This document shows positions 21,850 to 39,300 of a stretch of 64,000 nt of DNA, in pieces. Positions within the stretch are counted from its first letter, which is position 1; each line of letters begins with the position of its first letter. The notes under the pieces were generated by a model. That model ran no database searches. It worked only from the letters and a program-made list of their open reading frames with translations, and had not been told where the DNA came from. Position numbers and translations under genes: made by a program. Source of the DNA: Macrostomum lignano (lineage: Eukaryota); contig NIVC01003920.1 of NCBI GenBank assembly GCA_002269645.1, forward strand, positions 5,652 through 69,651. The letters are read 5' to 3'.

Positions 21850-24800
21850 TCACTCCCTCTTCTTGTCGGTGGCCGCCTTCTTTGGGGCGCCGTTTGCGGC
21901 GGCTCCCGCGCTGCCGTCCGTCGCTACGACTGGAGCAGCCGAAGGAGGACGGCTTGCGGCGCCACCTTGCCGGAACAGGCCGCTTATGGCGTCCGCCAGA
22001 CCGCCGAACAGCAGGGCGCCCGCTAGCCATTCGAACGGGTAGAACGGGTCCATCGGGCCCAGCAGCTTGACGGCCAGCCTGCGGATTGGGGGAGAGATTT
22101 TTCAGCAATGTGATTCACCCACCAACCAAATTCGCCACAGGCATTCACCCACCAACCAAATTCGTCACAGGCATTCACCCACCAACCAAATTCGTCACAG
22201 GCATTCACCCACCAACCAAATTCGTCACAGGCATTCACCCACCAACCAAATTTGTCCCAGGCATTCACCCACCAACCAAATTCGTCACAGGCATTCACCA
22301 ACCAACCAAATTCGTCACAGGCATTCACCCACCAACCAAATTCATCACAGGCATTCACCCACCAACCAAATTCGTCACAGGCATTCACCCACCAGTACCA
22401 GCAAACAAATTTGTCACAGGCATTCACCTACCAGTACCAGCTAACAAATTTGTCACAGGCATTCAACCACTAGACCCAGATATGCAACTGTCACAGGCTT
22501 TTACCTAAGCAGGACAAAGAAGGCCGCAGCGCCCAGATAGACGTGATTGTGATACTGAGCAGGCAGGTGGCCCGTGTGCTCCATTAGAAAGACGATAGCC
22601 ACAACAAGGCAAGCCTTGGTGGTGCTGAAATTCGAAGATGGGAATGAAGTAAGTAACGAGCATTGGTGTCGCATTAAGGGATTATCAAATATTTATCTTG
22701 ACAGAATGCACCATAACAGATCGCAGCATTTCTGCTTATGCACACAGATAGGGCGCTAAAAATGAGACTTCACACGAACCCAAAATGGGAAGGCAATGGC
22801 GTGCTGTGTAACTAAGTGGCTGTGCGAACTAAAAATCTAAAAGCTAAAAAAGCAACCCTGAAGCTGCTGAACTACTCAGAGTGAATCAAGCCACTGCAGT
22901 TCAGCACGGCAGGACATTCTGCTGTCTCTTACGCAGAGGGGCGCAGCATTTCGCTGACACCCGGCAGCCAGACTCCGCGTATTAGCCGCTCAAACAGCTT
23001 CATCTCGGCCGAGCCGGAGCCTTGAAAATGTTTCACGGGTGAATGAAAAGCGATGCTAGGAAAATCAAAGTGCGCCACTATGAGTAGTTTGCACCGCATC
23101 TTTAAATGGGTTGCTTTGATTTGCTAGCGATAGATAATGCTAAAGCGACCTGCAGGTACCAAGGCGGATGCCTTGACCATTTCTGCTGCTGTAAAAGCCT
23201 TTTAAAATTTTTAATCACTGAAGGTCCGAAGTCTGATGATGAATCTGAATTTTCAATCTAAACTCAAGTGCTCGATATACTTTGACAACACACAGAGGCT
23301 CAGAAAGATCAACAGATCAAAGATCAGTTTTACGTTCAAAATCTGACCTGGGCTATCGTTGAACATCTTAACATTTTTTAAGGCTGCGGACTAGAAAACA
23401 AAAGTTATGCCCACCTTTATGGAACGTAGCGAACCTGCACTGTTAGGGTGCAGCAGCAAAAATGTCTCCTAATCCGACTTGGAGATACAGGAGGGCTTGA
23501 AAAGCGCCAGTGTTCCTAACTGGCAACCAACACATGTGCTATGTTAATCAGGTGAGATTCTGATACAAAAAGGCAATCTAATAGTCGCCAGGTGAGATCG
23601 GTTAAACATATTCAGCGAGCTAGCTCAGATGATTGAATAAAAAAAATCGGTAAGACTTTCGTGCCGGACGAAAAAGGGATAAAAATAACATTAAATCATC
23701 GTTCTCTATACGAAAAAAATTGCACAATATACATGTACTACTAAAATAGCATTAAAGAAAGCAAGGAGAAAACAAAAGACCGGTAAGAGTTTAGAATTAG
23801 CCATATTAAAAGCCTTCAATGTGATTAAACGCACTATTAAACTATCGCGATATTTCATGGCTTTTAGTGCAAAATGAAACGAAACCGCATAGCAACACAG
23901 AGGAAGCCCCCGCCTGCAAATACCGAAGGCCTTACACTGAGAATGCTCCCACAATGGGCGGACGGAACTGGCCGGTGACGAGGCGGGCGAACAGCAGCAT
24001 CACCGGGCTGCCGTTGGCTTATCAGCGCATGGATGAAGGAAATTCGGCAGGTGAGTTCAAATTAGTCATGCACTACAAGCAGGTGTTGATGGGCGGCCAG
24101 ATATGCGTTCGTACGGTACTAATCGGAGGAAAATGCACCAACACGGCTAGAACTTGAACTTTAACGATGCTAAATGCCAGTCAGCGGTGCCCCTGCCTCT
24201 ACCAGCCAGTCAGCTAAGCTAAAAATAGACGTAATCGAACAGCCGAAGCTGCCGCAGACTGCTGCAAAACTGCAGTGGCGTCCGCCAAAGCCATCAAGAT
24301 GAACCGCAGCCATTAAAGTACGCAGACCGCAATGGCGAGGGAGGCAAAGCTGAAGGGAAGATGCACGGAGGGATCGAATCCGCCTGCGAATTCCGCAATG
24401 ATGGGAGAACTTGAGGGATTTGGGAAGTTAACTGCGGGCAGCCGCTCCCCTCCTGCTGCGCTCTTGAAGCGGCAAGTCAGCAGGCAATCAATTCCCCCCT
24501 GGCTGGCCAATGGCTGCTTCTAGCTGCAGAAATTGCTGCTTCCGTGTCCGCGGGGCTCGTTTCGCTTTGATTTCCTTGAAGCGAGCGATCGCAGGAAAGT
24601 GGATGGCGGGGAGCCTCCGCTTCTGCAGAGCGCTGATAAGGTCAAGACAAACGGGCTCGTAACAAACAGAAACAGGCAGAGTCCCGGAGGCAGGGAAGGG
24701 TTTGGGTGAAGTTTCTTCCAAATAAGGCCAACCCAGTTCGCAACAATGAGGCAGAGGCTGGCCAGAGAGCAGACCAGAAACCCTTAATTACAGCCATACA

Positions 24801-26213
24801 AATTACGCATTCATTTTTATCTTGCGACACTGAAGTAATCAGCAGTGAGCATCGAACACGCATGCCAGTCCCATTCATAGGCCTACCTTTCACAAGGCCG
24901 ATGAGTACATTGAGCAAGTAGGCCTGGGGGTAAAGCCGAACGCCTGCAGCCACTCCATCAAAGACTTTCCGTGTTCTCTGAATTTCTTTTAAAAGGCAGA
25001 CAGCCAGATGGACAGGTGCAAACTTAGCTAATTTGTAGACTAGGTCAAAGGGTGCATAGTTGAGGACATACCTGTAAACAGTGTATATTAATGTTGTAAA
25101 AAATTAAAATAAATACTTTCCTTAGATCATTTTAGTAATATCTCGCTAAGCCCATTGAAACAAAATTTCTACACTTAACACCAAATTTGATAAGTAAATA
25201 AGCTTATATGCACAGAATTAACTAGCATTGAAATTAATTTGGAATACTTTAACTAGGTAGTACTGATAACAGTAATAAAAGGAAAAATGACAAGCATCTA
25301 AATACAAACAAGAACAGAAGCTTAAAAAACACAAAATAACTTACCATACAATTGTTGCCACCAGAATGTCTCTATGGTTTTGAAAGGGCACAATTAGTGG
25401 TTCACCAGTCAAGCCATTACCAATTATAGTGCCTGCAAAGCACATTAGCATGCTTGCTAGCCAAGATGCAAATGAGTGATGTCTTGAAAATGTTGGTGTA
25501 CCTGAAAAATTAATAAGCATTTTATTAATTTTTAGGTATGTTTTATAAATTCTTTAAAATGTTTTCAAGCAGGTTTTACAATAGAATAATAAAACAATTT
25601 TATTACATAGGCCTAAAAACACAAATAAGCAAATGTAGGCTTAATTCATAATATATTGAGCAAATATATAATTGTGAAATCATTTTAATTTGTTTTAAAA
25701 TTAATAAGGTCAATAATAAGGTCAATAATATATTGAGCAAATATATAATTGTGCAATCATTTTAATTTGATTTTTTAGTCAAATGTTTTGATAATTGATA
25801 TCATTGATTAATAAATGAGATTAGCCTATACAAAGATTTTGGCTTTGCCTATAAGGAAATATGTAGATTGTAGGCCGACTATGCAGCAATATAAATGCTA
25901 AGTGCTCTTATATTGTTCTTAGTGCATAATAATGCTCATTGCAATCGTTTTTAATAGTCCCATGCTTTTAATATTTTGGGACATGTTTATCCAAGCTTTA
26001 CAAGAAATTATTATAAATTTAAATTCTAAGCAATAAAAAGGTTTACAAGAAAAAAATCTTTTCATCAAGCTCACCAAGTTGAGGAGTATCTTCCTTAACA
26101 AGCAAACACATCAAAATATAATGTGATATGTCGAAAAATGGATACATATTAATTCGCTGTAATGTTTTAGATACATCACTGAACGGGAAATAGTAGTCCA
26201 GATCCAAATCCAT
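21850..26213 (-). CDS. TMEM38: Trimeric intracellular cation channel (TRIC/TMEM38 family), 6 coding exons, 305 aa
   Basis: Exons 26213-26075, 25501-25345, 25071-24887, 23020-22933 (4B), 22624-22505, 22078-21850. All GT-AG, phases consistent, 918 nt total. Motifs MYPFFDISHY, SWLASMLMCFAG..GNGLTGEP, WYVLNYAPFD, LKEIQRTRKVFDGV, LYPQAY..IGLVKGSG, LFERLIRGVW, TKACL, DPFYPFE..LFGG, Lys-rich tail. Confidence 0.93.
22107..22470. repeat. 30-bp minisatellite, ~12 copies, in the last TMEM38 intron
   Basis: Unit GGCATTCACCCACCAACCAAATTCGTCACA. Confidence 0.95.
23936..24017 (-). CDS. TMEM38: Alternative exon 4A of TMEM38 (candidate mutually exclusive exon)
   Basis: 82 nt, AG|...|GTAAGG, phase 1 to phase 2 like exon 4B. 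Encodes (A)NGSPVMLLFARLVTGQFRPPIVGAFS, homologous to 4B (G)SGSAEMKLFERLIRGVWLPGVSEMLRPS. Confidence 0.65.
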
Positions 26214-28879: not shown

Positions 28880-31140
28880 AGCACACGAGGAGTGCGTGAA
28901 GCTGCTTGACGCATTCTATGACGAGCTCCTTCAGCAAGAAGCCACAGAAGAAGCTCGAGACAAAGTTCTGGACGAGCTGGATCAAGTTGAGAAACAGTTT
29001 CAAGACACCATGAAATGTGTAACTCAGTTCATCACTGCTCATCAGACTGCGGCGACTGCCGCGACTGCCGCGACTGCGGCGACTGCCGCGACTGCGGCGA
29101 CTGCCGCGACTGCGGCGACTGCCGCGACTGCGGCGACTGCGGCGACTGCCGCGACTGCCGCGACTGCAGCGACCGCATCTCCGTCAAAATCTTGCATGCT
29201 GTGTAAAGATCAACATGAGCTGTGAAAGTGCTCAACATTTAGACAGCTGTCAATTGAAAATCACTGGAAGGCTGCGCGTGATTCGAAATCGTGCTTTTGC
29301 TGCTTAGCTCGCGGTCATGCTGCTCGGATATGCCGTCATGGACGCCGATGTCGAATCGGTGAATGCAACAGGTTTCACCCCCGCTTGCTGCATTCTGACG
29401 AGGCGGTAAAAATTGAGTCGAAGAAGAATTCGCCGGCAGAAGGGGTCAAAACGAGCGCTAAGTCGGGTCGCAAAGGAGCCGTGATAACGATGATGGCAGG
29501 AAGTGGAGGTGGTTCTCAAGGCAGGCAGCTGTGTTGTGAAAGTGAACGCGCTTTTGGACGACGCGAGTACAAGGACATATGTGAATGCAGAGATTTCCGA
29601 AGCTGTGGAGCGAGTGAAAGTGAACGTTTTGAACGGACAGACAGAGAAATTCTTGACAGCTCCGGTTACGATGACGCTCGAAAGTGTAGATGGAAGTCTG
29701 AGTCGTCCGATCATCACAGCATTCACGACAGACAGCGTCACCGGGAAGCTGAAGGCCACGGATTGGCAGACGACAGCAGCGGATTGGAAACATCTGGAGC
29801 ATATTCCATTTCCTCAGCTCCATGCGCCGCATCTCATAGACCTGCTGATAGGAGTGGATCATGCGGAGTTACATGTGTCCTACCGAGAAGTTCGCGGTGG
29901 CCCTGGGGAGCCACAGGCACGTTTGACTCCCCTTGGATGGACAGGTGTGGGTCAAGTAGAACAGATTCAGCACCAGAAAAACTTGGCCAGCACCTTTTTC
30001 TGTTTCACCAGCGAGGAGATGCTGTCACCAGTGCGACGTAAGTTCCGGGAGGTAGAAGAAATCTGGTCAGCTCAGGACCAAAATTGGACAGCGGACGAGC
30101 AAGCTGCAGTCGAGCAAGCCAAGTCTTCGTTAAAGCTAACTAACGGCCGATACCAGCTGGGAATTCCGTGGAAGCCAGAGGCGAAAGTTCGCTCGAATAA
30201 CTATGAGATGGCGATCAAACGGCTTTGCAACACAGAGACCCGGTGGAAGAAAGATGTGGAGGTGGCAAAGCAATACAAGCATGCCTAGAGCGATATGGGC
30301 AGCAAGGCTACATTCGGCACGTTGCAGTAGAGGGGTTCTCAGCCAGAAGGTGCTTTCTGCCGCATTTTCCGATCATTCGATTCGACAAGCTGACGACAAA
30401 GGTTTGCATCGTCTTCGATGCCTCGGCGGGCGGGAACGAAAAGTCCTTAAATTCTCTGGTCTTTCCACGGCCGAAGCTTCAGCGAGAATTGTTTGACGTT
30501 CTGCTTTGCTTCAGGAGAGATGCGGTGGCTGGGGCTTGTGACATCTCCGAGATGTACCTCCAGATCGAAATGGCACCGGAGGACAGGCCGACGCATAGCT
30601 TTCTATGGCGTGAGATGGACTCCAGCAAGCCTGTTAAAATTTTTGAGAGCAACCGCATCGTTTTCGGCAACTCGAGCTCGCCGTTTCTTGCTCAGTTCGT
30701 AGTTCGTGAGCATGCGGAACGCCTGAAAGAAGAGCTGCCATTAGCTGCAGATGCTGTTCTCAACTCCACCTATATGGACGATTGTTTAGATTCGGTCGGG
30801 TCAGAGGCTGAGGCGATCCAGCTGTTTCAAGAGTTGAAGACTCGCTGGGAGCGTGCAGTCATGCACCCCAGGAAATGGATGTCCGATTCGCGAGAACTGT
30901 TGAGCAGAGTGCCACCAGAAGATCGAGTAGCCGAAGTAACATTGGAAGGCACACCGCTGCCATCCATCAAGACGCTTGGTGTAGAATGGAGAAGCGATCG
31001 GAACAAGTGCACCTTTAAAGTCGACCAGAGAGATCAGAGAGACCAAGTCTGTCACAGATCCGGACCAGTGGAGGTGTGTCACGACCGAATTCCATCCAGC
31101 CGATGCGTTGTCTCGAGGAACTTCAGCGAAGCAGCTGACG
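28880..31140 (+). mobile_element. BEL/Pao LTR retrotransposon internal fragment (gag, protease, RT), degenerate, no LTRs seen
   Basis: Gag CFCCLARGHAARIC..C.IGEC..FHPRLLH; protease ALLDDASTRTYV; IDLLIGVD; KVCIVFDASA; DISEMYLQI; FGNSSSPFL; STYMDDCLDS. Confidence 0.88.
29045..29175. repeat. 9-bp microsatellite (ACTGC(G/C)GCG)n inside BEL gag, in frame (poly Thr-Ala-Ala)
   Basis: Direct reading of the sequence. Confidence 0.9.
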
Positions 31141-33370
31141 GAGGTTGACAGCTGGTGGCATGGACAAAGGGTGACTGGTCGGAGCAGAGTCGTTAGCATG
31201 AATGAGGAACGATCGGCGGTCAGACGATTAGACCCGACCATGGCGACCAGGTTCTTGAGCTCAAAGCGGCGCATCTGCATGCAAGGCGAGACGGCTCGAT
31301 TCGCGACCATCTGCTGGCTGCCGCGGAGAGACGGGTGCGAGTTGCGAAAGTGCAGCTGGTTGGCAAGGCCTCCGCGAGGCCGATTGCGAGGCTGCGTCCG
31401 CTAATCACGAAAGGGGGCTTGAGAACTGAGTAGTTGACATTTTTGGCCAAACTTTAATTTATTGAAAAAATTCTGCGATTTAGCGATCATTTCCTTAACT
31501 TCGACTAACCGTTGCATGCGTTTCGATTTCGATGTTTTCAGCTTCAAGCTATTTTGGTGATGGGATAACGCGCTATATTTTTCTTTTTGTGGCTTTTGAG
31601 AGTTTTGCTTCCCTGCGCATTAAATCCAGTTTGGTTCTAACGCATTGTGTTTTTTCATGTCGGCTGTCTATTTTGGGAGTTTTTGTTCTGTTTTTTGTGT
31701 TTGTTTTCTGTTTATGTGTTTTTTGTATTTCTTTGTTTTTTGGCGTTGTTGCGAAGACGTTTTGCATACTCTGTTCGGTTAGTTTTCCCATTTTCAGCGT
31801 TTATCCCCTTTGCTCATTTCATCGCACTGTACGCTACGTTTCAGGTTCGATCCCGTTTGCTAACCCAGTTCGAATATGTATCGCATCCCCGTGATTCGTT
31901 TACTAACCTAGTTATTTGATCCTATTTTCACTTTGTCATTTTGTCGAGCGTATTTCATCCTAGCGATTTAACTTTATTCCTGAAAAGTACGCGGTACGAT
32001 GATAATTGAATGTTTCCATTTTTAAGATCCTTGTTCGAGGTGCTCTTTGTTGTTGGCATGTGCTCATGCCAAGAAGGGAGGTATGGATTGAAGAGGAAAG
32101 GTTTTGCTTATTTCATTGTACGTCTGTACTATTACTCATCATTTGCCTATTTTACCTGCCCCCTCCGCGCCTCACGCCACCTTTCTCACTCCCCATTCTG
32201 ATTGGTTAACGTACGAGTACATAGTAATTCATGCACATTTACACCCCCCCCTGTGTCAACCCCGCCTTCTACTTAATAAATTGAGTAAAATATACCTAGC
32301 AAGACTAGACGGCGTGTACCCCTTTTGATTTGTTGTCTGCTACAACTGTCAAATGCGAGGCCAGCCGCCAAGTGGTGCATTCTCGATTCTTTGGATTCTC
32401 TTGTCAACATAGTAAGTATAAAAAATTAACAAACGTTTATACTTGGGGCAGAAACCGAAATTGATACTATTTCTGGGACGCCCCGCACATATTTTCATGC
32501 ACCTATAAGCTATATTTATTGTATAAAAAATATCACCCGGTATGCATTTGAATCTGCGGATATATTTATTATTCGATTATTTTTCTAGCCAAACAGTTCG
32601 GCAGCAGATAGGGACTACTTGCTATAGCCAAGCCTCATGTGCAAGCAGCGAGAGATGGAACGAGCCATAGGAACCTGGAATTTGACAAGAAACTTTCCTA
32701 CAATCATCGTGCTCAATAATTTAAGTTTCAGCATTGCATGGCTGGGAGCACTGAAAATTGCATCTTTCCCTCGAATATTAAATAGCAGAAAATTTCCACC
32801 GGCGGTATGCGAACGAGCTGCCAAGCTGCAGCCTCGCAATTACGGACAATGAGAGTTGAAACTGCAGGTTTCATCTGCAATCAATCTGCCTTGCAATTTA
32901 AGGAGCTATTTCCCTTCAACTCGAATTGCAGACTGAATCGTTGCGAGCTACACTTGGCCCTGACTAATTACTGACACGTCAGTTATGCTCGTGAAATGGC
33001 TAGGATTTAAAAAGATATGGTGGGGCAGATTTGGACATGAAACTGCTAACAAACCTGATGAACTGAGGATACGCATGCTTCAGTCCTAAACCATCGGCCA
33101 GATACTGTGTTTTCCGAGTCCTGCAGTTTCAGCCAGTGAGAGTTGCTCACTTGCGGCAATCACTCAGTTCCTCTGATCAGAGAGCGGGCATTGGCTAGCA
33201 GCTCACGCAGCAGGTTAAAGCTTTTCCCTCTGGGGATAAATCCAGATCCAGAATCCCACACAGAGCTTTCTATTCATTGAGCTTCAAATCTTATCGATAG
33301 ACTGAACTTGCAATTTCGCTGTTAAAAGCAATTTCTCTCGCCTAAATTCTGCCGAGTCACTTACAGAGTG

Positions 33371-36300
33371 ATGCGGCACCAAAAAATTGTCTTTTTAGGC
33401 CTCTTCCTGCTCTGGCCAGTTGCTGGGGCGGCTCGACAAGCGGCTACCGTGCTCTGCATCATCTCTGACAAGGCTCCGTTCTCAGCCGACGCTGACTACT
33501 TCCGGTATGCTTTTGGCTACATCAACACTAACTTGAGCAGCCTGTTTCCCGAGGTGCAGTTCAACTACCAGCAAATTGTGACTGACGGGGTGAGAATCCC
33601 GCTATTCTACCTGCATGACTATTCATACTGTAAAGACTTCACTTTAGATTGTAGAACGAAAATTGGGGGGGGGGTGCTTGCTATCTGGACAGATTGCAGA
33701 AACAGGTAAAAACACCACCCCCAAACACTGAATAAAGTACAAGCTAACATCACTAACAAAAATCAACCCAGCCAAGTCACCACACTAATATTAGAAATGG
33801 CGAAATTTCAATGCGAACTCCGCACCGCAGGACAAGCTCGGCAGCGCGGCCAAGGCTCTGTTCGATGGCTACCTGAGCCCGCCCAACAAAGCTCTGCTCC
33901 TCGGACCGGCCTTCTCCCAGCAGGCGCAGATCGTGGCCGACATCGCCCAGTTCTACTACCTGCCGCAGGTGACTGCAGGGACGGCAGTCAAACAATTGTT
34001 GACGCCTTGATAGTATAGAAACTCCCCTATCAGAACATCGAGTTATTTAACTCAGTTCCACTACAAGGTCCAAAGAAGGAGTGAAAATAAATCTCTGCTG
34101 TGTGTGGGCTCAGGGCCATAGACACCTGGGAACCACCACAGTAAGTTTATTTTATAAAGTAGAGCAGAGCAGAATTTAAAGAAAGCCAAGAGGCCTAGAA
34201 GACGCTTGGCGTGAGCGCTCTGAAATATATCACTATTTTCCATTGGGTATTGTATAATTAAATTGATGCAAAATGTGGGTATTATAAAAAGAAATAATGC
34301 CATTATATAAAATTAATTATGAGTACAAAACTCTCGCAATCGTCTGACAACAACCGAATGACTCCGTCTCCTTAGTGCATACATAACAGTGGCGTCGCAA
34401 GCTTTTGGACTTAGTCAACTTGCGAGATATGTCGAAGTCACCAGGAAAAGTACCTGGTAAGACACCAGTGAAGTCTCCAGTGAAGATGCCAGCAATAGCT
34501 CCGAGCATGCTCTCACAGGATGCGACTTTGTCGAACCAAAGCAGCCGTCCAACGTCGGGAATGGCCGAAATAGAGCGATTGGACGAGAACTCTAGCCTGG
34601 AGCGATGGATGGATCGCTTCGAGATCGCGTCGAAGTTCTTCAACTGGAGCGCGACCGACAAGGCTCAGGTGCTGCTTTTGAGACTCGCACCGCAGCTGTT
34701 TGAAAAACTGGCGGACTATCTGGCGCCCAAAAAGCCTGGAGATAAGATATTCGACGAGCTGAAAACAGCGCTGGAGGATATAATGCTGCCCAAAACGTAC
34801 GTCCTTGCCGAAAGATTCAATTTTCAAAGTATAAGACGAGAACCAAACGAAACAGTGCGAGTGTTCTCCGAGCGATTGATCAAAGCGGCAGAAAAGTGTG
34901 AGTTTCAAAACAAAGACGAAAGACTGCGTGATCAGTTCATTTGCGGCCTAAACAACCAAGGCATTATTGGGAAGCTCATCGTCAAAGATCACAAGAAGCT
35001 CAGTTTTAAGGACGCAGCTAGCGAAGCAGAAGCGCATGCAAGTCTGTTGGAGACTCCTATTATGAAGAGTGCACCAAAAACTGATGCTGGGTCCATCTTA
35101 AAGGTCGATTTATCGAAGCCTAGAACCGTCGAAAAGAAGAGCAATCGGACTCACGGAAAGGGTCTCGAGAAGGCGTGTCAAAAGTGTGGACGCGCACATG
35201 CCAGGATGCAGTGCCCAGCGTTTGGGAAAATTTGTAATAAGTGCGGTAAGCCTAATCATTTTGCGAAGGTCTGCAGAAATGGTGAGAGTAAAAGCAGGAC
35301 ATCAGGCGGAAATTCTGTACAACATGTAGCTGGGAGTGGAAACATTTTCGCGGCGGAAGCCCGAAGGTGTTGTCAGCGACAGCAGCCTCGAGAGCCGATT
35401 GCTATCACGGTGAAGATTCTCGAAGCAAACAGAGGGCATCCCATCCGTTGCGAGCTCGATACGGGAGCTGGAGTGTCGATCTTGTCAGAAGCCTTGTGGA
35501 ACCAACTTGGTCGCCCAACTCTAAGACCTTCGGAAGTAAAGCTGGGAGGCTATGCGAGTGACCATACGTTTCAGGTATTGGGAAGGTATGAAGCGACTGT
35601 TGATATCGAAGGCGAATTTCGGACAATCAATTTTGAAGTTGTGAAAGGGAACAAGAGCTACGCTCTTCTTGGAAGGGACGTGCTTTGTGTCCATTTGGAA
35701 TCAAGTCAGGCTGTGGGAGAGGCGGCACCTTGTGCATCTATGAAAGCGCATCTAGAGTTAAAGGCGGGCGCGACACCGGAGCACATAAAGGCAAGGCCGT
35801 TGCCTTTTGCCCAACGTGAAGCTGTTCAGAGAGAGATAGATCGATTGCTCCAGGAGGGAATCATAGAGCCTGTACGTTTCGCAGAGTGGGCATCGCCTAT
35901 TGTGGTCGTGCCGAAACAACGTGGAGGAATTCGGCTTTGCGTGGATTACAAAAGGACTCTAAACCCGCAATTGGTACCTGACAGCTACCCGATGCCGACT
36001 CCGGAAGAGGCGTTTTCAGTAGTATCTGGCTGCAAGCGATACACGCTGCTCGACTTGGAGAAAGCCTACAATCAAATCGAGCTGGATGCCGGATCAAAGC
36101 CGCTAACAGTGATGTCAACACCATTTGGGAATTACCAATATAACAGACTAGTGTGCGGGATAAAAACGGCGCCGTCCATTTTCCAAAGATATATCTCAGA
36201 AGTAATTCAGGGAATTAATGGATCTATAGCCTACATAGATGATGTGTTGATCGGTGGAAAGGATGAGGACGAGCTGTTGTCAAGAGAGGAGGAGGTTCTG

Positions 36301-39300
36301 CAGCGGCTGGAAGCAGAGGAACTGCGTGTAAATAAGGAGAAGTGCCAGCGGAATCAAAGCAGGATTCGGTTTTTGGGCCACATACTCGACAACGGCAACA
36401 TTTACCCAGACGAAGAAAAAGTTCGTGCAATTAAAGACATGGAAGCGCCTAAAAACCTGGCTGAGCTAGAATAATTCCTGGGATTAGTGGCATTTTGCTC
36501 GCGGTTCATTCAGAATTTAGGTGACCTGACTGCTCCGCTGATGCAGCTGAAGCAAAAAAATGTACCCTTCGAGTGGGGACCGAAACAGAGCAAGGCGCTG
36601 GAAAACCTCAAAGCTTCAATATCTAGAGATGCGCAGCTAACGGCCTATGATCCAGATCGGCCTGTGGAGCTCGAGGTCGATGCTTCGCAGAAGGCCCTGG
36701 GAGGAATTCTGAGCCAGGAGGGTCGTCCAGTGCTCTACATCAGCAAAATATTGTCGAAGGCTGAGCGAAACTACTCGCAGATAGAACGTGAGGCGTTGGC
36801 CATAGTTTGGGGTGTTCGCAGATGCCATCGATTCTTGTGTGGCAGGAAGTTTACGCTGGTTACCGACCACAAACCGCTGGTTTACATATTTGCCGTGGAC
36901 AGCGAGCTACCTGCTCGTGTTTCAGCGAGATTGCAGCGTTGGTCGATTTTGCTTACGGCGTATGACTACGAAATCAAATATCGAAACACCAAGGCGATGT
37001 CATCAGATGCGTTGTCCAGACTAGTATCGCAGCATAAGAGTGAAGCAACTTTGGAGATTGGAAATGTAAATTCTTTCTGCACGCTGTTGCCAACTGAAGA
37101 GATTGTAAAAGCAACTCGAGAATGCAACGAGATGCAGCGCTTGTTGAGTGCTGCATCTCGTTGCATTAGATGCATAGATCAGATCAGGAAGTTTCAAGTC
37201 ACCGAAGCTACGAGCCTTCAAGCCGGTCCGAGATGAGCTCACAGTACAAGACGGTCTAATTCTTCGAGGTCATAGAGTAGGGATACCTCGATCACTGCGT
37301 TGTAAGACGATCGGAGTGGTTCACCAAGCACACCTGGGAATAGTCAAATCTAAATCTCTGGCAAGAACTGAGCTCTGGTGGCCAGCGATGGACAAAGACT
37401 TGGAGAAAACCATTAGCAAGTGCCGGGTATGCCGATCAGCCAAACCACAAAATAGAGATTTTCGGACGCCCTGGCCGCAGGCTGCTGGGCCATGGCAGCG
37501 AGTTTATGCAGATTTTGCAGGACCAATTCAGAAACAGTACATCTTGGTGCTGGTAGACGCATACACTGGTTACCCAGAGATTTACATCGTTAATGACATG
37601 AAGTCGACCACAGTAATAGAGCGTCTCCGTCGAACGTTTTCCCAGTTCGGAGTACCACAAACTTTGGTTACCGACAACGGGCCGAGCTTTATGAGTTCTG
37701 AATTGAACCAGTGGCTCACGGAAATCGACTGCGAGCATCTTACTACGCCAGCATATCATCCGCAAAGCAACGGTGCGGCTGAACGGCTGGTAAGAACTGT
37801 GAAGGAGACAATAGAAGCAAACGGGTTCAGTCAGAAGACGATTGACCGTTTTTTTTGTTTTATCGAGCGTCGGCTGGCAGAAACGGTGTTTCACCTGCAG
37901 AGCAAATGTTTGCGAGAAGGATTCGGGTGCCGTTCACTGCTAGGCAGGTCGGTCTCGAGGAGCAGGTGATTTACAAGAACTTCCGAGATGCTGCGGTTCC
38001 GGCAAGAATTGTGCTACCGCTAGGAAGGAGCATGGCGCTCATCAAGACTGAGGAACAGAAGCCAGTCTACCGGAGGGCTCATCTGGATCAACTGAGGCCA
38101 TGCACTGACTCTGATCAACAGCCTGGAGGGCAAACGGATCAGACGGCAGAGCAGTCCGATATCGACCAGCTGCCCAAGTCCGGGGAAGAGGGAGAGCCGG
38201 AGGACAAAGAGCATCTCCCACCGGAGGATCAAGGCCAGCCACGGCGCAGCTACCGACTGGCGCTAAAGCCACGAGTTGACTATAGATGCTGATGTTGGCT
38301 TGCATTGTCTATTCACTAACTTGCGCTACCCATTGTAAGGGGGAAGGTGCTGTGTGTGGGCTCAGTGGGCTCAGGGAACCACCACAGTAAGTTTATTTTA
38401 TAAAGTAGAGCAGAGCAGAATTTAAAGAAAGCCAAGAGGCCTAGAAGACGCTTGGCGTGAGCGCTCTGAAATATATGAGTACAAAACTCTCGCAATCGTC
38501 TGACAACAACCGAATGACTCCGTCTCCTTAGTGCATACATAACAATCTCGAATGACACAACTACAGAGTACGGATTGGGGCATCATCCATTGACACGAAA
38601 AAATAGCGGCAGGGTTGGTGGGGCGTTTCTCAAAACCATGAATTTCTAGGTTGGCTACTCAAAATAGTTCAATCAAATGCGATTTTTCGATTGTCTGAAG
38701 CGCAATGATGCCTGTGACCTTATGGTTTTGCTAAAAATGATGCTTACGACAGGTTTTTTGGAAGAACTTTTCGTAACCTGAGCTGTCAAAGCGCTGGATT
38801 CGATTACAGCTTGAATCTTAGGCACATCGTATAGATATTAGCAAGTACTGACTTTCCAGCCTCAGGCAATCCTTGGTGTGCTAGAAGCAATAGTAAAATC
38901 GTATACCTCGTGAAGCTATAGTAAAATGAATAGGCCGTCACCTACGTCTCCGTCTCTCAAATAGGCCGTCATCGGCTCCGTCTCTCAAATAGGCCGTCAT
39001 CGGCTTCGTCTTTCAAATAGGCCGTCACCCATGCCTCCGTCTCACGAATAGGCTATCGCTCTTACCTCCTAGTGATGGCTGCAAAGGACAGCAGATGTTG
39101 CCAGTTGATTCTCGGTGAAGGGCAGCCCACGATTTTGATGGGGACCCGCAGATTGGCTACTCGAACACGATGCCGGAGCTGAGCGTGAAGTCCCAGTATC
39201 CCTACTTTGTCCGGCTGCCCACCAGCCCGAGCCAGTTCGTGCAGCCGGCGATCGAGCTTCTGCTGAGGTACCGCTGGAGCAGATTTGCACTGCTCACCAC

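What the first reader, a model, noticed from the sequence alone, without database searches (positions are those of the whole stretch)
22933..24017. Mutually exclusive exon pair in the TRIC/TMEM38 channel
Seen: exon 4A (82 nt) and 4B (88 nt) are homologous and both run phase 1 to 2. Either alone keeps the frame (303 or 305 aa); including both would frameshift. 4B keeps the family consensus (KGSG..LFERLIRGVW), whereas 4A changes it to KANG..LFARLVTGQF and loses two charged residues. Known: this segment holds the glycine-rich motif of the second TRIC repeat, and vertebrates use separate genes (TRIC-A and TRIC-B). Inference: one gene may make two functionally distinct channels by splicing. I am not aware of this being described.
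Basis: partly seen in the sequence, partly recalled or inferred. Interest (0 to 1): 0.8.

Follow-up and report, generated by a model that had tools for sequence, protein, structure and literature searches.

The report
Alternative exon pair in flatworm TRIC channel
A flatworm (Macrostomum lignano) gene for an intracellular potassium channel carries two interchangeable copies of one exon, so it can encode two versions of the channel's gate region; parasitic flatworms have the same arrangement, which sits in databases but which I did not find discussed in print.

Summary
The window is Macrostomum lignano scaffold NIVC01003920.1. On the minus strand it carries a 7-exon TRIC/TMEM38 gene. Exons 4A (24017-23936, 82 nt) and 4B (23020-22933, 88 nt) are homologous, both phase 1 to 2 and both GT-AG. 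Using either one gives a 303 or 305 aa protein. Using both or neither shifts the frame into an early stop.

Both products already exist as exact database entries. 4B is PAA49288.1, an RNA-seq-derived model. 4A is UniRef A0A1I8FWR2.

The same layout (exon 3, divergent A, canonical B) occurs in Paragonimus, Schistosoma japonicum, Taenia crassiceps and Schistocephalus. A and B isoforms of one gene are annotated in at least seven trematode and cestode species.

A rotifer gene, a nematode gene and the second M. lignano TRIC paralog each have only one copy of this segment. Whether Macrostomum 4A shares its origin with the parasite A exon is unresolved.

The exon encodes the lower half of the TM5 glycine kink, the cytoplasmic half of TM5 and the TM5-TM6 linker. 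4A drops most charges, the invariant Gly161 and Trp178.

A second, 99.9% identical genomic copy has a 28-nt deletion in 4B, so only 4A can give it a full-length protein.

I could not obtain direct RNA evidence for 4A in M. lignano. I found no paper describing this. It is a new example of a known kind of splicing, of moderate interest.

The parts
26075..26213 (-). TRIC exon 1 (ATG at 26213; 139 nt, ends in phase 1)
   Evidence: Translation MDLDLDYYFPFSDVSKTLQRINMYPFFDISHYILMCLLVKEDTPQL(G), donor TTG|gtgagc.
25345..25501 (-). TRIC exon 2 (157 nt; TM2 region)
   Evidence: Acceptor tttttcag|G, donor ATG|gtaagt.
24887..25071 (-). TRIC exon 3 (185 nt). It holds the KEIQRTRK motif (the KEVxRxxK PIP2 motif) and ends with ..LVK + G, phase 1.
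   Evidence: Motif role taken from PMC5143425 and PMC5401562.
23936..24017 (-). Exon 4A, the divergent alternative (82 nt, phase 1 to 2). Peptide: ANGSPVMLLFARLVTGQFRPPIVGAFSV.
   Evidence: Acceptor gataag|CC, donor AGT|gtaagg. Second-best window-wide hit of the exon-4 profile, E=0.023. GC 0.66 against flanking introns at 0.53 and 0.40. The resulting 303-aa protein equals UniRef100_A0A1I8FWR2.
23021..23935 (-). Intron between 4A and 4B (915 nt)
   Evidence: Too long for steric exclusion. Inverted repeats in the cluster are not above shuffled controls.
22933..23020 (-). Exon 4B, the canonical alternative (88 nt, phase 1 to 2). Peptide: GSGSAEMKLFERLIRGVWLPGVSEMLRPSA.
   Evidence: Acceptor tttcaag|GC, donor TGC|gtaaga. 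Profile hit 52.4 bits. The resulting 305-aa protein equals PAA49288.1 BOX15_Mlig006406g2, an RNA-seq-derived model.
22505..22624 (-). TRIC exon 5 (120 nt; TM6, starts ..TTKAC)
21850..22078 (-). TRIC exon 6 (229 nt including TGA; TM7 and a disordered tail ending KKRE)
   Evidence: pLDDT is below 50 after about residue 273.

Best explanation
Exons 4A and 4B are a genuine mutually exclusive exon pair in a TRIC-B-type ER/SR monovalent-cation channel gene of Macrostomum lignano.

Each mRNA must carry exactly one of them. Both are 1 mod 3 in length, so double inclusion or double skipping shifts the frame into a premature stop upstream of further exon junctions. Such transcripts are unproductive and probably removed by nonsense-mediated decay (inferred).

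4B gives the canonical channel and is probably the major form. 4A swaps a single cassette: the second half of the TM5 glycine kink, the cytoplasmic half of TM5, and the TM5-TM6 linker. In C. elegans TRIC-B that linker caps the PIP2 head group at the cytoplasmic gate. The cytoplasmic half of TM5 lies at the trimer interface, as described for prokaryotic TRIC structures.

4A makes this cassette almost uncharged. It replaces Gly161, Arg175 and Trp178, which are otherwise invariant or nearly so, and shortens the linker by two residues. The inferred result is a second channel subtype with altered gating, lipid dependence or trimer pairing. It would come from one gene, where nematodes use tandem genes and vertebrates use TRIC-A and TRIC-B.
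For: Shown:
- Exon coordinates, phases, splice sites and frame consequences.
- Homology of 4A to exon 4 above window-wide background.
- An old duplication that preserved residues through synonymous change, an in-frame 6-nt length difference, and exon-like GC (0.66) and GC3 (0.81).
- Both products are exact database entries from two independent assemblies and annotations. The 4B model is RNA-seq derived.
- The same exon 3 / A / B / exon 5 layout, with the same phases, occurs in Paragonimus, S. japonicum, T. crassiceps and Schistocephalus.
- A and B isoforms of one gene are annotated in S. mansoni, S. japonicum, S. haematobium, S. margrebowiei, O. felineus, D. dendriticum and M. corti.
- Every A-type exon, in trematodes, cestodes and Macrostomum, lacks the Arg of LVRGVW.
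- AlphaFold models of both isoforms give the TRIC fold with similar confidence across the cassette. The 4A model superposes on 5EGI with TM-score 0.88 and rmsd 2.7 A.
- A second genomic copy (L004) has a 28-nt frameshifting deletion in 4B but an intact 4A. Its 4A product equals UniRef A0A1I8FW95 exactly.
- Structural role of the segment: PMC5401562 and PMC5143425.
- Both alternative exons use AAG acceptors, while all four constitutive acceptors are CAG.
Against: - There is no direct RNA evidence for 4A in M. lignano. The only RNA-derived model uses 4B, and a junction-peptide search found no transcript-derived fragment.
- I could not verify how the A-type UniRef models were built; they may be ab initio predictions.
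- 4A changes Gly161, invariant in 34 other TRICs, and the nearly invariant Trp178. It lowers the Pfam score by 28 bits.
- Alanine substitution of the three C-kink glycines reduces C. elegans TRIC activity (PMC5143425). 4A could therefore be a decaying exon.
- The M. lignano copies are 99.9% identical, so no selection test is possible.
- NMD enforcement and any functional difference are inferences.
Confidence: 0.65

Rival explanations
1. 4A is a relic of an old exon duplication that is no longer, or only negligibly, spliced in. M. lignano makes only the 4B channel, and the 303-aa database entries are gene-prediction choices rather than real proteins.
For: - The RNA-seq-derived annotation carries only 4B.
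- 4A lacks the invariant Gly161 and the nearly invariant Trp178 and Arg175, and lacks the NE(F/L)LxPS linker motif.
- 4A scores only 11.6 bits against the exon-4 profile.
- Its acceptor (gataag|C) has a weak pyrimidine tract.
- A stop-free 27-codon frame in 66% GC sequence is not rare by itself.
Against: - About 50% nucleotide divergence has accumulated without any frame-breaking indel; the only length change is 6 nt, in frame.
- Five of nine conserved residues are kept through codon changes.
- GC and GC3 are exon-like and above the flanking introns.
- The splice sites and phase are intact.
- The equivalent divergent A exon is clearly maintained in trematodes and cestodes: 73% identity between S. 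mansoni and S. japonicum, and between T. solium and M. corti.
- In the second genomic copy it is 4B, not 4A, that is broken.
Confidence: 0.27
2. On origin: the Macrostomum 4A/4B pair arose by its own exon duplication after the Macrostomum-specific TRIC gene duplication. It would then be convergent with the neodermatan A/B pair rather than inherited from a common flatworm ancestor.
For: - 4A shows no specific affinity to parasite A exons: -1.0 bits against the trematode-A profile and 9.0 against cestode-A, versus 6.3 and 8.6 against the two B profiles.
- The two M. lignano TRIC genes are sisters with 100% bootstrap, and the paralog has a single exon 4 with no A-like candidate in its intron 3.
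- Intron 3 is 869 nt here but about 50 nt in neodermatans, and 4A is 82 nt rather than 88 nt.
Against: - The same exon is duplicated, with the same phases and the same order (divergent copy upstream).
- The same Arg of LVRGVW is lost in all three groups.
- Trematode and cestode A exons also fail to recognise each other by profile, although they share the distinctive ~50-nt intron. A exons therefore evolve too fast for this test to be informative.
Confidence: 0.45
3. The pair is an assembly or annotation artefact, for example a collapsed or chimeric scaffold joining pieces of two gene copies.
For: The Mlig_3_7 assembly is highly redundant (PMC5730564).
Against: The same exon order is present on two scaffolds of this assembly (L004, L005). 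It is also implied by three gene models from an independent assembly. The two exons are only about 50% identical at nucleotide level, unlike the 99.9% identity between gene copies.
Confidence: 0.02

Closest known systems
TRIC genes of parasitic flatworms with annotated A/B isoforms (S. mansoni Smp_021600; S. japonicum 'isoform 2' and 'isoform 3'; O. felineus CRM22_004975; D. dendriticum; M. corti)
   Same: - The same exon is duplicated in tandem, with the same phase 1 to 2.
- The divergent copy comes first and the canonical copy second.
- The A copy lacks the Arg of LVRGVW.
- Either exon alone keeps the frame.
   Different: - There, both exons are 88 nt and A follows exon 3 after only about 50 nt. 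Here 4A is 82 nt and follows an 869-nt intron.
- Parasite A exons keep the G-x-G-S start, whereas M. lignano 4A has A-N-G-S.
- Sequence gives no support for orthology of the A exons.
C. elegans TRIC-B1 / TRIC-B2 (Y57A10A.10 and Y57A10A.28; PDB 5EGI, 5EIK)
   Same: Closest solved relatives: phmmer E=2.5e-70 and 1.1e-65, and model TM-score 0.83-0.88. They share the KEVxRxxK motif and the TM5 kink K-G-x-G-S. Two channel variants exist in one organism.
   Different: The two nematode variants are whole-gene duplicates and both keep the canonical EQLVRGVW segment. Here only a 28-30-residue cassette differs, and one version is non-canonical.
Vertebrate TRIC-A (TMEM38A) and TRIC-B (TMEM38B)
   Same: Two channel subtypes with distinct gating and regulation (abstracts of PMC6567852 and PMC10522464).
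   Different: These are separate genes that differ along their whole length, and both keep FEQLVRGVW/KGDW-type TM5b. The flatworm isoforms are not orthologues of A and B. The 4B isoform scores slightly better against TRIC-B (1.9e-45) than against TRIC-A (3.5e-41).
Mutually exclusive exons in other helminth or channel genes, e.g. coq-2 in helminths (PMC7434440) and voltage-gated channel exon pairs (own knowledge)
   Same: Tandem homologous exons of which one is chosen per mRNA, swapping a functional cassette. These are a precedent for a functional switch of this kind in helminths (title and abstract).
   Different: Different gene families. For coq-2 the functional consequence has been shown experimentally; here nothing has been tested.

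Membership tests
TRIC / TMEM38 channel family (Pfam PF05197) | Significant match to the TRIC domain above the curated threshold | tested here: met
   188 bits with 4A and 215.7 bits with 4B, against a cut-off of 25.9.
TRIC / TMEM38 channel family (Pfam PF05197) | Seven-helix TRIC fold resembling solved eukaryotic TRIC structures | tested here: met
   phmmer hit to 5EGI with E=2.5e-70. AlphaFold2 pLDDT 82.5 and 83.9. Foldseek against 5egi_A gives TMt 0.88 and rmsd 2.7 A.
TRIC / TMEM38 channel family (Pfam PF05197) | KEVxRxxK PIP2-binding motif of eukaryotic TRICs | tested here: met
   K127-E-I-Q-R131-T-R-K134 lies in constitutive exon 3. E128, R131 and K134 are invariant in the 35-sequence alignment. 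Motif definition from PMC5143425.
TRIC / TMEM38 channel family (Pfam PF05197) | Glycine-rich kink in TM5 (K-G-x-G-S/G) | tested here: inconclusive
   The 4B isoform has K-G161-S-G163-S, so the feature is met. The 4A isoform has K-A161-N-G163-S-P165: one Gly is kept, the invariant Gly161 is lost, and a Pro is added.
TRIC / TMEM38 channel family (Pfam PF05197) | Homotrimer conducting K+/Na+ in the ER/SR membrane | not testable with these tools
   Needs expression and electrophysiology.
Mutually exclusive exon (MXE) cluster | Adjacent tandem exons that are homologous to each other | tested here: met
   9 of 21 residues identical. 4A is the second-best exon-4 profile hit in the window, E=0.023.
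Mutually exclusive exon (MXE) cluster | Same splice phase, similar length, own canonical splice sites | tested here: met
   82 and 88 nt, both phase 1 to 2, both AG...GT.
Mutually exclusive exon (MXE) cluster | Including both or neither destroys the reading frame | tested here: met
   With both, a stop falls 13 codons into 4B. With neither, a stop falls in exon 5.
Mutually exclusive exon (MXE) cluster | mRNAs observed with exactly one of the two exons, each in turn | tested here: inconclusive
   The 4B form is an RNA-seq-derived model. The 4A form exists only as gene models of unverified basis. No transcript fragment was found.
Mutually exclusive exon (MXE) cluster | Pair conserved in related species | tested here: inconclusive
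   An equivalent pair is present in trematodes and cestodes, but orthology of 4A is unresolved. No other macrostomorphan or planarian sequence was available.
Docking-site / selector RNA-structure MXE control (Dscam type) | Competing intronic base-pairing between one docking site and selector sequences next to each alternative exon | tested here: not met
   The best inverted repeats (15/17 and 13/14 nt) are matched by 5-10% of dinucleotide shuffles, and their arrangement does not fit the model. There is no comparative data.
Steric-hindrance MXE control | Intron between the two exons too short to be spliced | tested here: not met
   The intron between 4A and 4B is 915 nt.

The most novel reading that the evidence does not exclude
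The A/B exon choice is an ancient switch predating the split of macrostomorph and neodermatan flatworms. It gives these animals two TRIC channel subtypes that differ only in the cytoplasmic gate / PIP2-cap / trimer-interface cassette, so it would be the flatworm counterpart of TRIC-A versus TRIC-B. In polyploid M. lignano the switch may be resolving into separate genes, since one of two near-identical copies has lost 4B and can make only the A form.
Probability: 0.3. Interest if true: 0.65.

Novelty: new member of a known kind. Interest (0 to 1): 0.45.

Why it matters
TRIC channels are thought to supply counter-ion current during Ca2+ release. How their cytoplasmic gate, PIP2 and the kinked TM5 control opening is still unsettled.

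A natural cassette swap confined to TM5b and the TM5-TM6 linker is a ready-made structure-function experiment. It is maintained in many flatworm species and removes the near-universal Arg of LVRGVW each time. Comparing the two isoforms tests that segment directly.

It would also show a third route to TRIC subtype diversity: exon duplication, alongside the tandem genes of nematodes and the dispersed paralogs of vertebrates.

Practically, it exposes annotation errors. Chimeric models in several parasite genomes contain both exons plus intron sequence, and an A exon in Schistocephalus is unannotated.

Tried and rejected
1. Transcript evidence for 4A. A junction-spanning peptide search of the 5.8-billion-protein collection returned only the known 132-aa fragment. 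No Logan- or JGI-derived M. lignano fragment appeared either. The word index clearly misses some exact relatives, so this negative result is weak.

2. dN/dS within M. lignano. The second copy differs at 3 of 3,595 aligned bases and not at all in 4A, so there is no information.

3. Orthology of 4A with parasite A exons, tested by profile cross-scoring. The test is uninformative, because trematode and cestode A exons do not recognise each other either.

4. RNA-structure control of exon choice. Inverted repeats are at chance level.

5. A hidden A exon in the M. lignano paralog. An exhaustive scan for phase-compatible AG...GT candidates and a profile scan found none.

6. The same duplication outside flatworms. 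The Brachionus and Meloidogyne loci have one copy. Among the 202 proteins retrieved, only flatworm models show two exon-4-like segments, plus one fused tandem-gene model from Diploscapter.

7. Unnamed metatranscriptome TRICs with a non-canonical TM5b could not be assigned to organisms. I dropped them.

8. Literature searches. TRIC or TMEM38 combined with 'mutually exclusive', and Smp_021600, found nothing relevant. The C. elegans TRIC-B structure paper (Nature 2016) is not held. Residue roles are therefore taken second-hand from PMC5401562 and PMC5143425.
Full report
**What is there**

The window is eukaryotic. Its 21.8-26.2 kb region carries a seven-exon gene on the minus strand:
- e1 26213-26075
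- e2 25501-25345
- e3 25071-24887
- e4A 24017-23936 (82 nt)
- e4B 23020-22933 (88 nt)
- e5 22624-22505
- e6 22078-21850

All introns are GT-AG. Splicing in 4A gives 303 aa and 4B gives 305 aa. Using both gives a stop 13 codons into 4B. Using neither gives a stop in exon 5. Both proteins are TRIC channels: Pfam PF05197 scores 188 and 215.7 bits. Their closest solved relatives are C. elegans TRIC-B1 and TRIC-B2, at E=2.5e-70 and 1.1e-65.

**Is the similarity of 4A and 4B real?**

I built an exon-4 profile from trematode, cestode, nematode, rotifer and vertebrate sequences, with no Macrostomum sequence, and ran it over all 2,682 six-frame ORF pieces of the window.
- 4B scored 52.4 bits (E=3.7e-15).
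- 4A came second at 11.6 bits (E=0.023).
- Everything else scored 5.7 bits or less.

The second hit lies in the right intron, strand and phase, and is flanked by AG and GT. Over the first 21 codons 9 residues are identical, and 5 of those use different codons, including AGC versus TCG serine. Nucleotide identity is 32/63. The only length difference is 6 nt, in frame. 4A has exon-like GC (0.66, GC3 0.81) against flanking introns of 0.53 and 0.40. This is the pattern of an old duplication in which both copies stayed coding.

**Source and database status**

The sequence is Macrostomum lignano scaffold NIVC01003920.1 of assembly Mlig_3_7.

The 305-aa 4B product is exactly PAA49288.1 (BOX15_Mlig006406g2). 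The 303-aa 4A product is exactly UniRef100_A0A1I8FWR2. Two further A-type entries exist, A0A1I8FW95 and A0A1I8I9N8.

The GenBank BOX15 models come purely from a genome-guided RNA-seq assembly (StringTie plus TACO with --isoform-frac 0.75; PMC5730564). The exon 3-4B-exon 5 junctions are therefore RNA supported, B is probably the major form, and a minor A form would have been filtered out.

To my knowledge the A0A1I8 entries derive from the earlier, independent ML2 assembly imported through WormBase ParaSite. I could not verify whether RNA evidence underlies them.

**The same arrangement in other flatworms**

Several parasite gene models contain both an A-like and a B-like segment joined by translated intron: P. 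westermani P0009, S. japonicum P0024, H. microstoma P0032 and T. crassiceps P0034.

I read three loci in detail: P. westermani L001, S. japonicum L006 and T. crassiceps L007. Each has this layout:
- exon 3 ending ...AAAG|gt
- an intron of about 50 nt
- an A exon, 88 nt in the two trematode loci
- an intron of 0.7 to 6 kb
- an 88-nt B exon
- exon 5 starting with TTK
- phases identical to M. lignano

Schistocephalus solidus is annotated only with B. It has an unannotated A exon about 215 nt upstream of B.

A and B isoforms that are otherwise identical are deposited for the same gene in:
- S. mansoni (Smp_021600)
- S. japonicum ('isoform 2' and 'isoform 3')
- S. haematobium
- S. margrebowiei
- O. 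felineus (CRM22_004975)
- D. dendriticum
- M. corti

In these lineages A evolves faster than B but is clearly maintained. Between S. mansoni and S. japonicum, identity is 73% for A, 97% for B and 94% for the rest of the core. The T. solium / M. corti comparison gives the same 73% for A, and E. multilocularis / M. corti the same 97% for B.

**Outside flatworms and in the paralog**

A rotifer locus (Brachionus) and a nematode locus (Meloidogyne) each have one copy of this segment. Among the 202 TRIC proteins retrieved, only flatworm models show two exon-4-like segments, apart from one fused tandem-gene model in Diploscapter.

M. lignano has a second TRIC gene (P0002; 58% identical in the core). 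It has a single 88-nt exon 4, and its 1.1-kb intron 3 contains no A-like candidate. A neighbour-joining tree of the constitutive core puts the two M. lignano genes together (100% bootstrap) and Neodermata together (100%).

**One origin or two?**

This is unresolved. M. lignano 4A has no specific affinity to parasite A exons in profile cross-tests. But trematode and cestode A exons do not recognise each other either, despite sharing the distinctive ~50-nt intron. The test therefore lacks power.

For a single origin:
- the same exon, phase and order
- the same loss of the Arg of LVRGVW in all A types

For independent origin:
- the paralog lacks A
- the intron length and exon length differ

I put it near even.

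**What the cassette is**

The AlphaFold2 models (pLDDT 82.5 and 83.9) place residues 150-174 in TM5, 175-187/189 in a loop, and TM6 after that. Confidence across the cassette is similar for both isoforms. The 4A model superposes on 5EGI with TM-score 0.88.

Published structures give the following:
- The glycine kinks of TM2 and TM5 shape the central constriction.
- Alanine substitution of the C-kink glycines abolishes bacterial TRIC activity and reduces C. elegans TRIC activity.
- In prokaryotic TRIC structures, the cytoplasmic half of TM5 contacts neighbouring subunits.
- In C. elegans TRIC-B, the PIP2 head group enters between TM5 and TM6, binds the KEVxR basic residues and is capped by the TM5-TM6 loop.

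These come from PMC5401562, PMC5143425 and PMC5477506. The basic residues lie in constitutive exon 3 here. The alternative exon supplies the rest of that gate.

Compared with 4B, 4A:
- has 2 charged residues instead of 7
- changes Gly161 (invariant in 34 other sequences) to Ala
- changes Trp178 to Phe and Arg175 to Thr
- adds Pro165
- lacks the NE(F/L)LxPS linker motif

**How exclusivity is probably enforced**

The 915-nt intron between the exons rules out steric hindrance. All sites are U2-type GT-AG. Inverted repeats in the cluster are no better than shuffles. What the sequence does show is that only single-inclusion mRNAs are in frame. Removal of the others by NMD is an inference. Both alternative exons have AAG acceptors while the four constitutive ones have CAG. 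That fits regulated, weak sites, but the sample is small.

**A second gene copy**

Scaffold NIVC01001368.1 (L004) carries a copy that is 99.9% identical over the first 3.6 kb. Its exon 4B has a 28-nt deletion (window-equivalent about 23005-22978). This leaves 60 nt, so using it shifts the frame. Its exon 4A and flanks are identical to the window. Its 4A product, with the copy-specific R133Q change, equals UniRef A0A1I8FW95 exactly. GenBank annotates only a 132-aa C-terminal fragment there (P0020).

If the deletion is real, that copy can make a full-length channel only through 4A. It is then either a decaying redundant copy in a neopolyploid genome or an A-only gene in the making. I could not check the raw reads.

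**Verdict**

Use of 4A in M. lignano and any functional difference remain unshown. I put the chance that 4A is a working alternative exon at about 0.65, and the chance that it is a relic at about 0.27.

The isoforms are already in databases for this and many other flatworms. I found no paper that describes the exon pair. It is a new gene-family example of a well-known splicing mode. Its interest is moderate and comes mainly from where in the channel the swap falls and from its recurrence across flatworms.

Noticed in passing
L004 9683-9742 (NIVC01001368.1; equivalent to window about 23005-22978 inside exon 4B): A second, 99.9% identical copy of the TRIC gene has a 28-nt frameshifting deletion in exon 4B but an intact 4A. 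Its 4A product equals UniRef A0A1I8FW95 exactly. GenBank annotates only a 132-aa fragment there (BOX15_Mlig004454g1).
   Followed up: partly
window 22113-22470 (intron 5 of the TRIC gene): Tandem array of a 30-nt unit (9.4 copies, 96% matches) running into 2.9 copies of a related 39-nt unit. The array differs in length between the two gene copies.
   Followed up: no
window 21850-26213: Sharp composition switch inside one gene. Exons 1-3 and introns 1-2 have 24-47% GC, while exons 4A to 6 have 55-69% GC. The boundary lies near exon 3 / intron 3.
   Followed up: no
window 34405-37969 (+), and 30225-31148 (+): Ty3/gypsy-like retrotransposon pol region in three consecutive ORFs: aspartyl protease and reverse transcriptase, RNase H, then integrase. 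A separate reverse-transcriptase fragment lies upstream.
   Followed up: no
L010 6972-7058 (Schistocephalus solidus UYSU01032306.1): Unannotated A-type exon (GTGSSFMRSFASVVYGTWKPMSIEFLSIS) about 215 nt upstream of the annotated B exon.
   Followed up: partly
P0009 (P. westermani), P0024 (S. japonicum), P0032 (H. microstoma), P0034 (T. crassiceps): Deposited gene models that include both alternative exons, bridged by translated intron sequence. These are likely annotation errors caused by the exon pair.
   Followed up: partly
P0066, P0090, P0103, P0142, P0160, P0187 (unnamed metatranscriptome/metagenome proteins): TRIC proteins of unknown organisms with K-G-N-G-S-G and a TM5b lacking the usual Glu and Arg (for example FMKPITRLVCG). 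The canonical charges are therefore not universal outside flatworms.
   Followed up: partly
window 29045-29173: 9-nt tandem repeat (14 copies, GACTGCCGC) that reads as Arg/Ser/Gly-rich or Ala/Val-rich open frames on the minus strand.
   Followed up: no
window 24263-24286 versus 22890-22906 and 23957-23970: One stretch of intron 3 is complementary both to a site just downstream of 4B (15/17) and to a site inside 4A (12/14), using overlapping arms. This is at the level expected by chance in shuffles and the geometry does not fit a docking/selector model. It would be worth rechecking if other Macrostomum sequences become available.
   Followed up: partly
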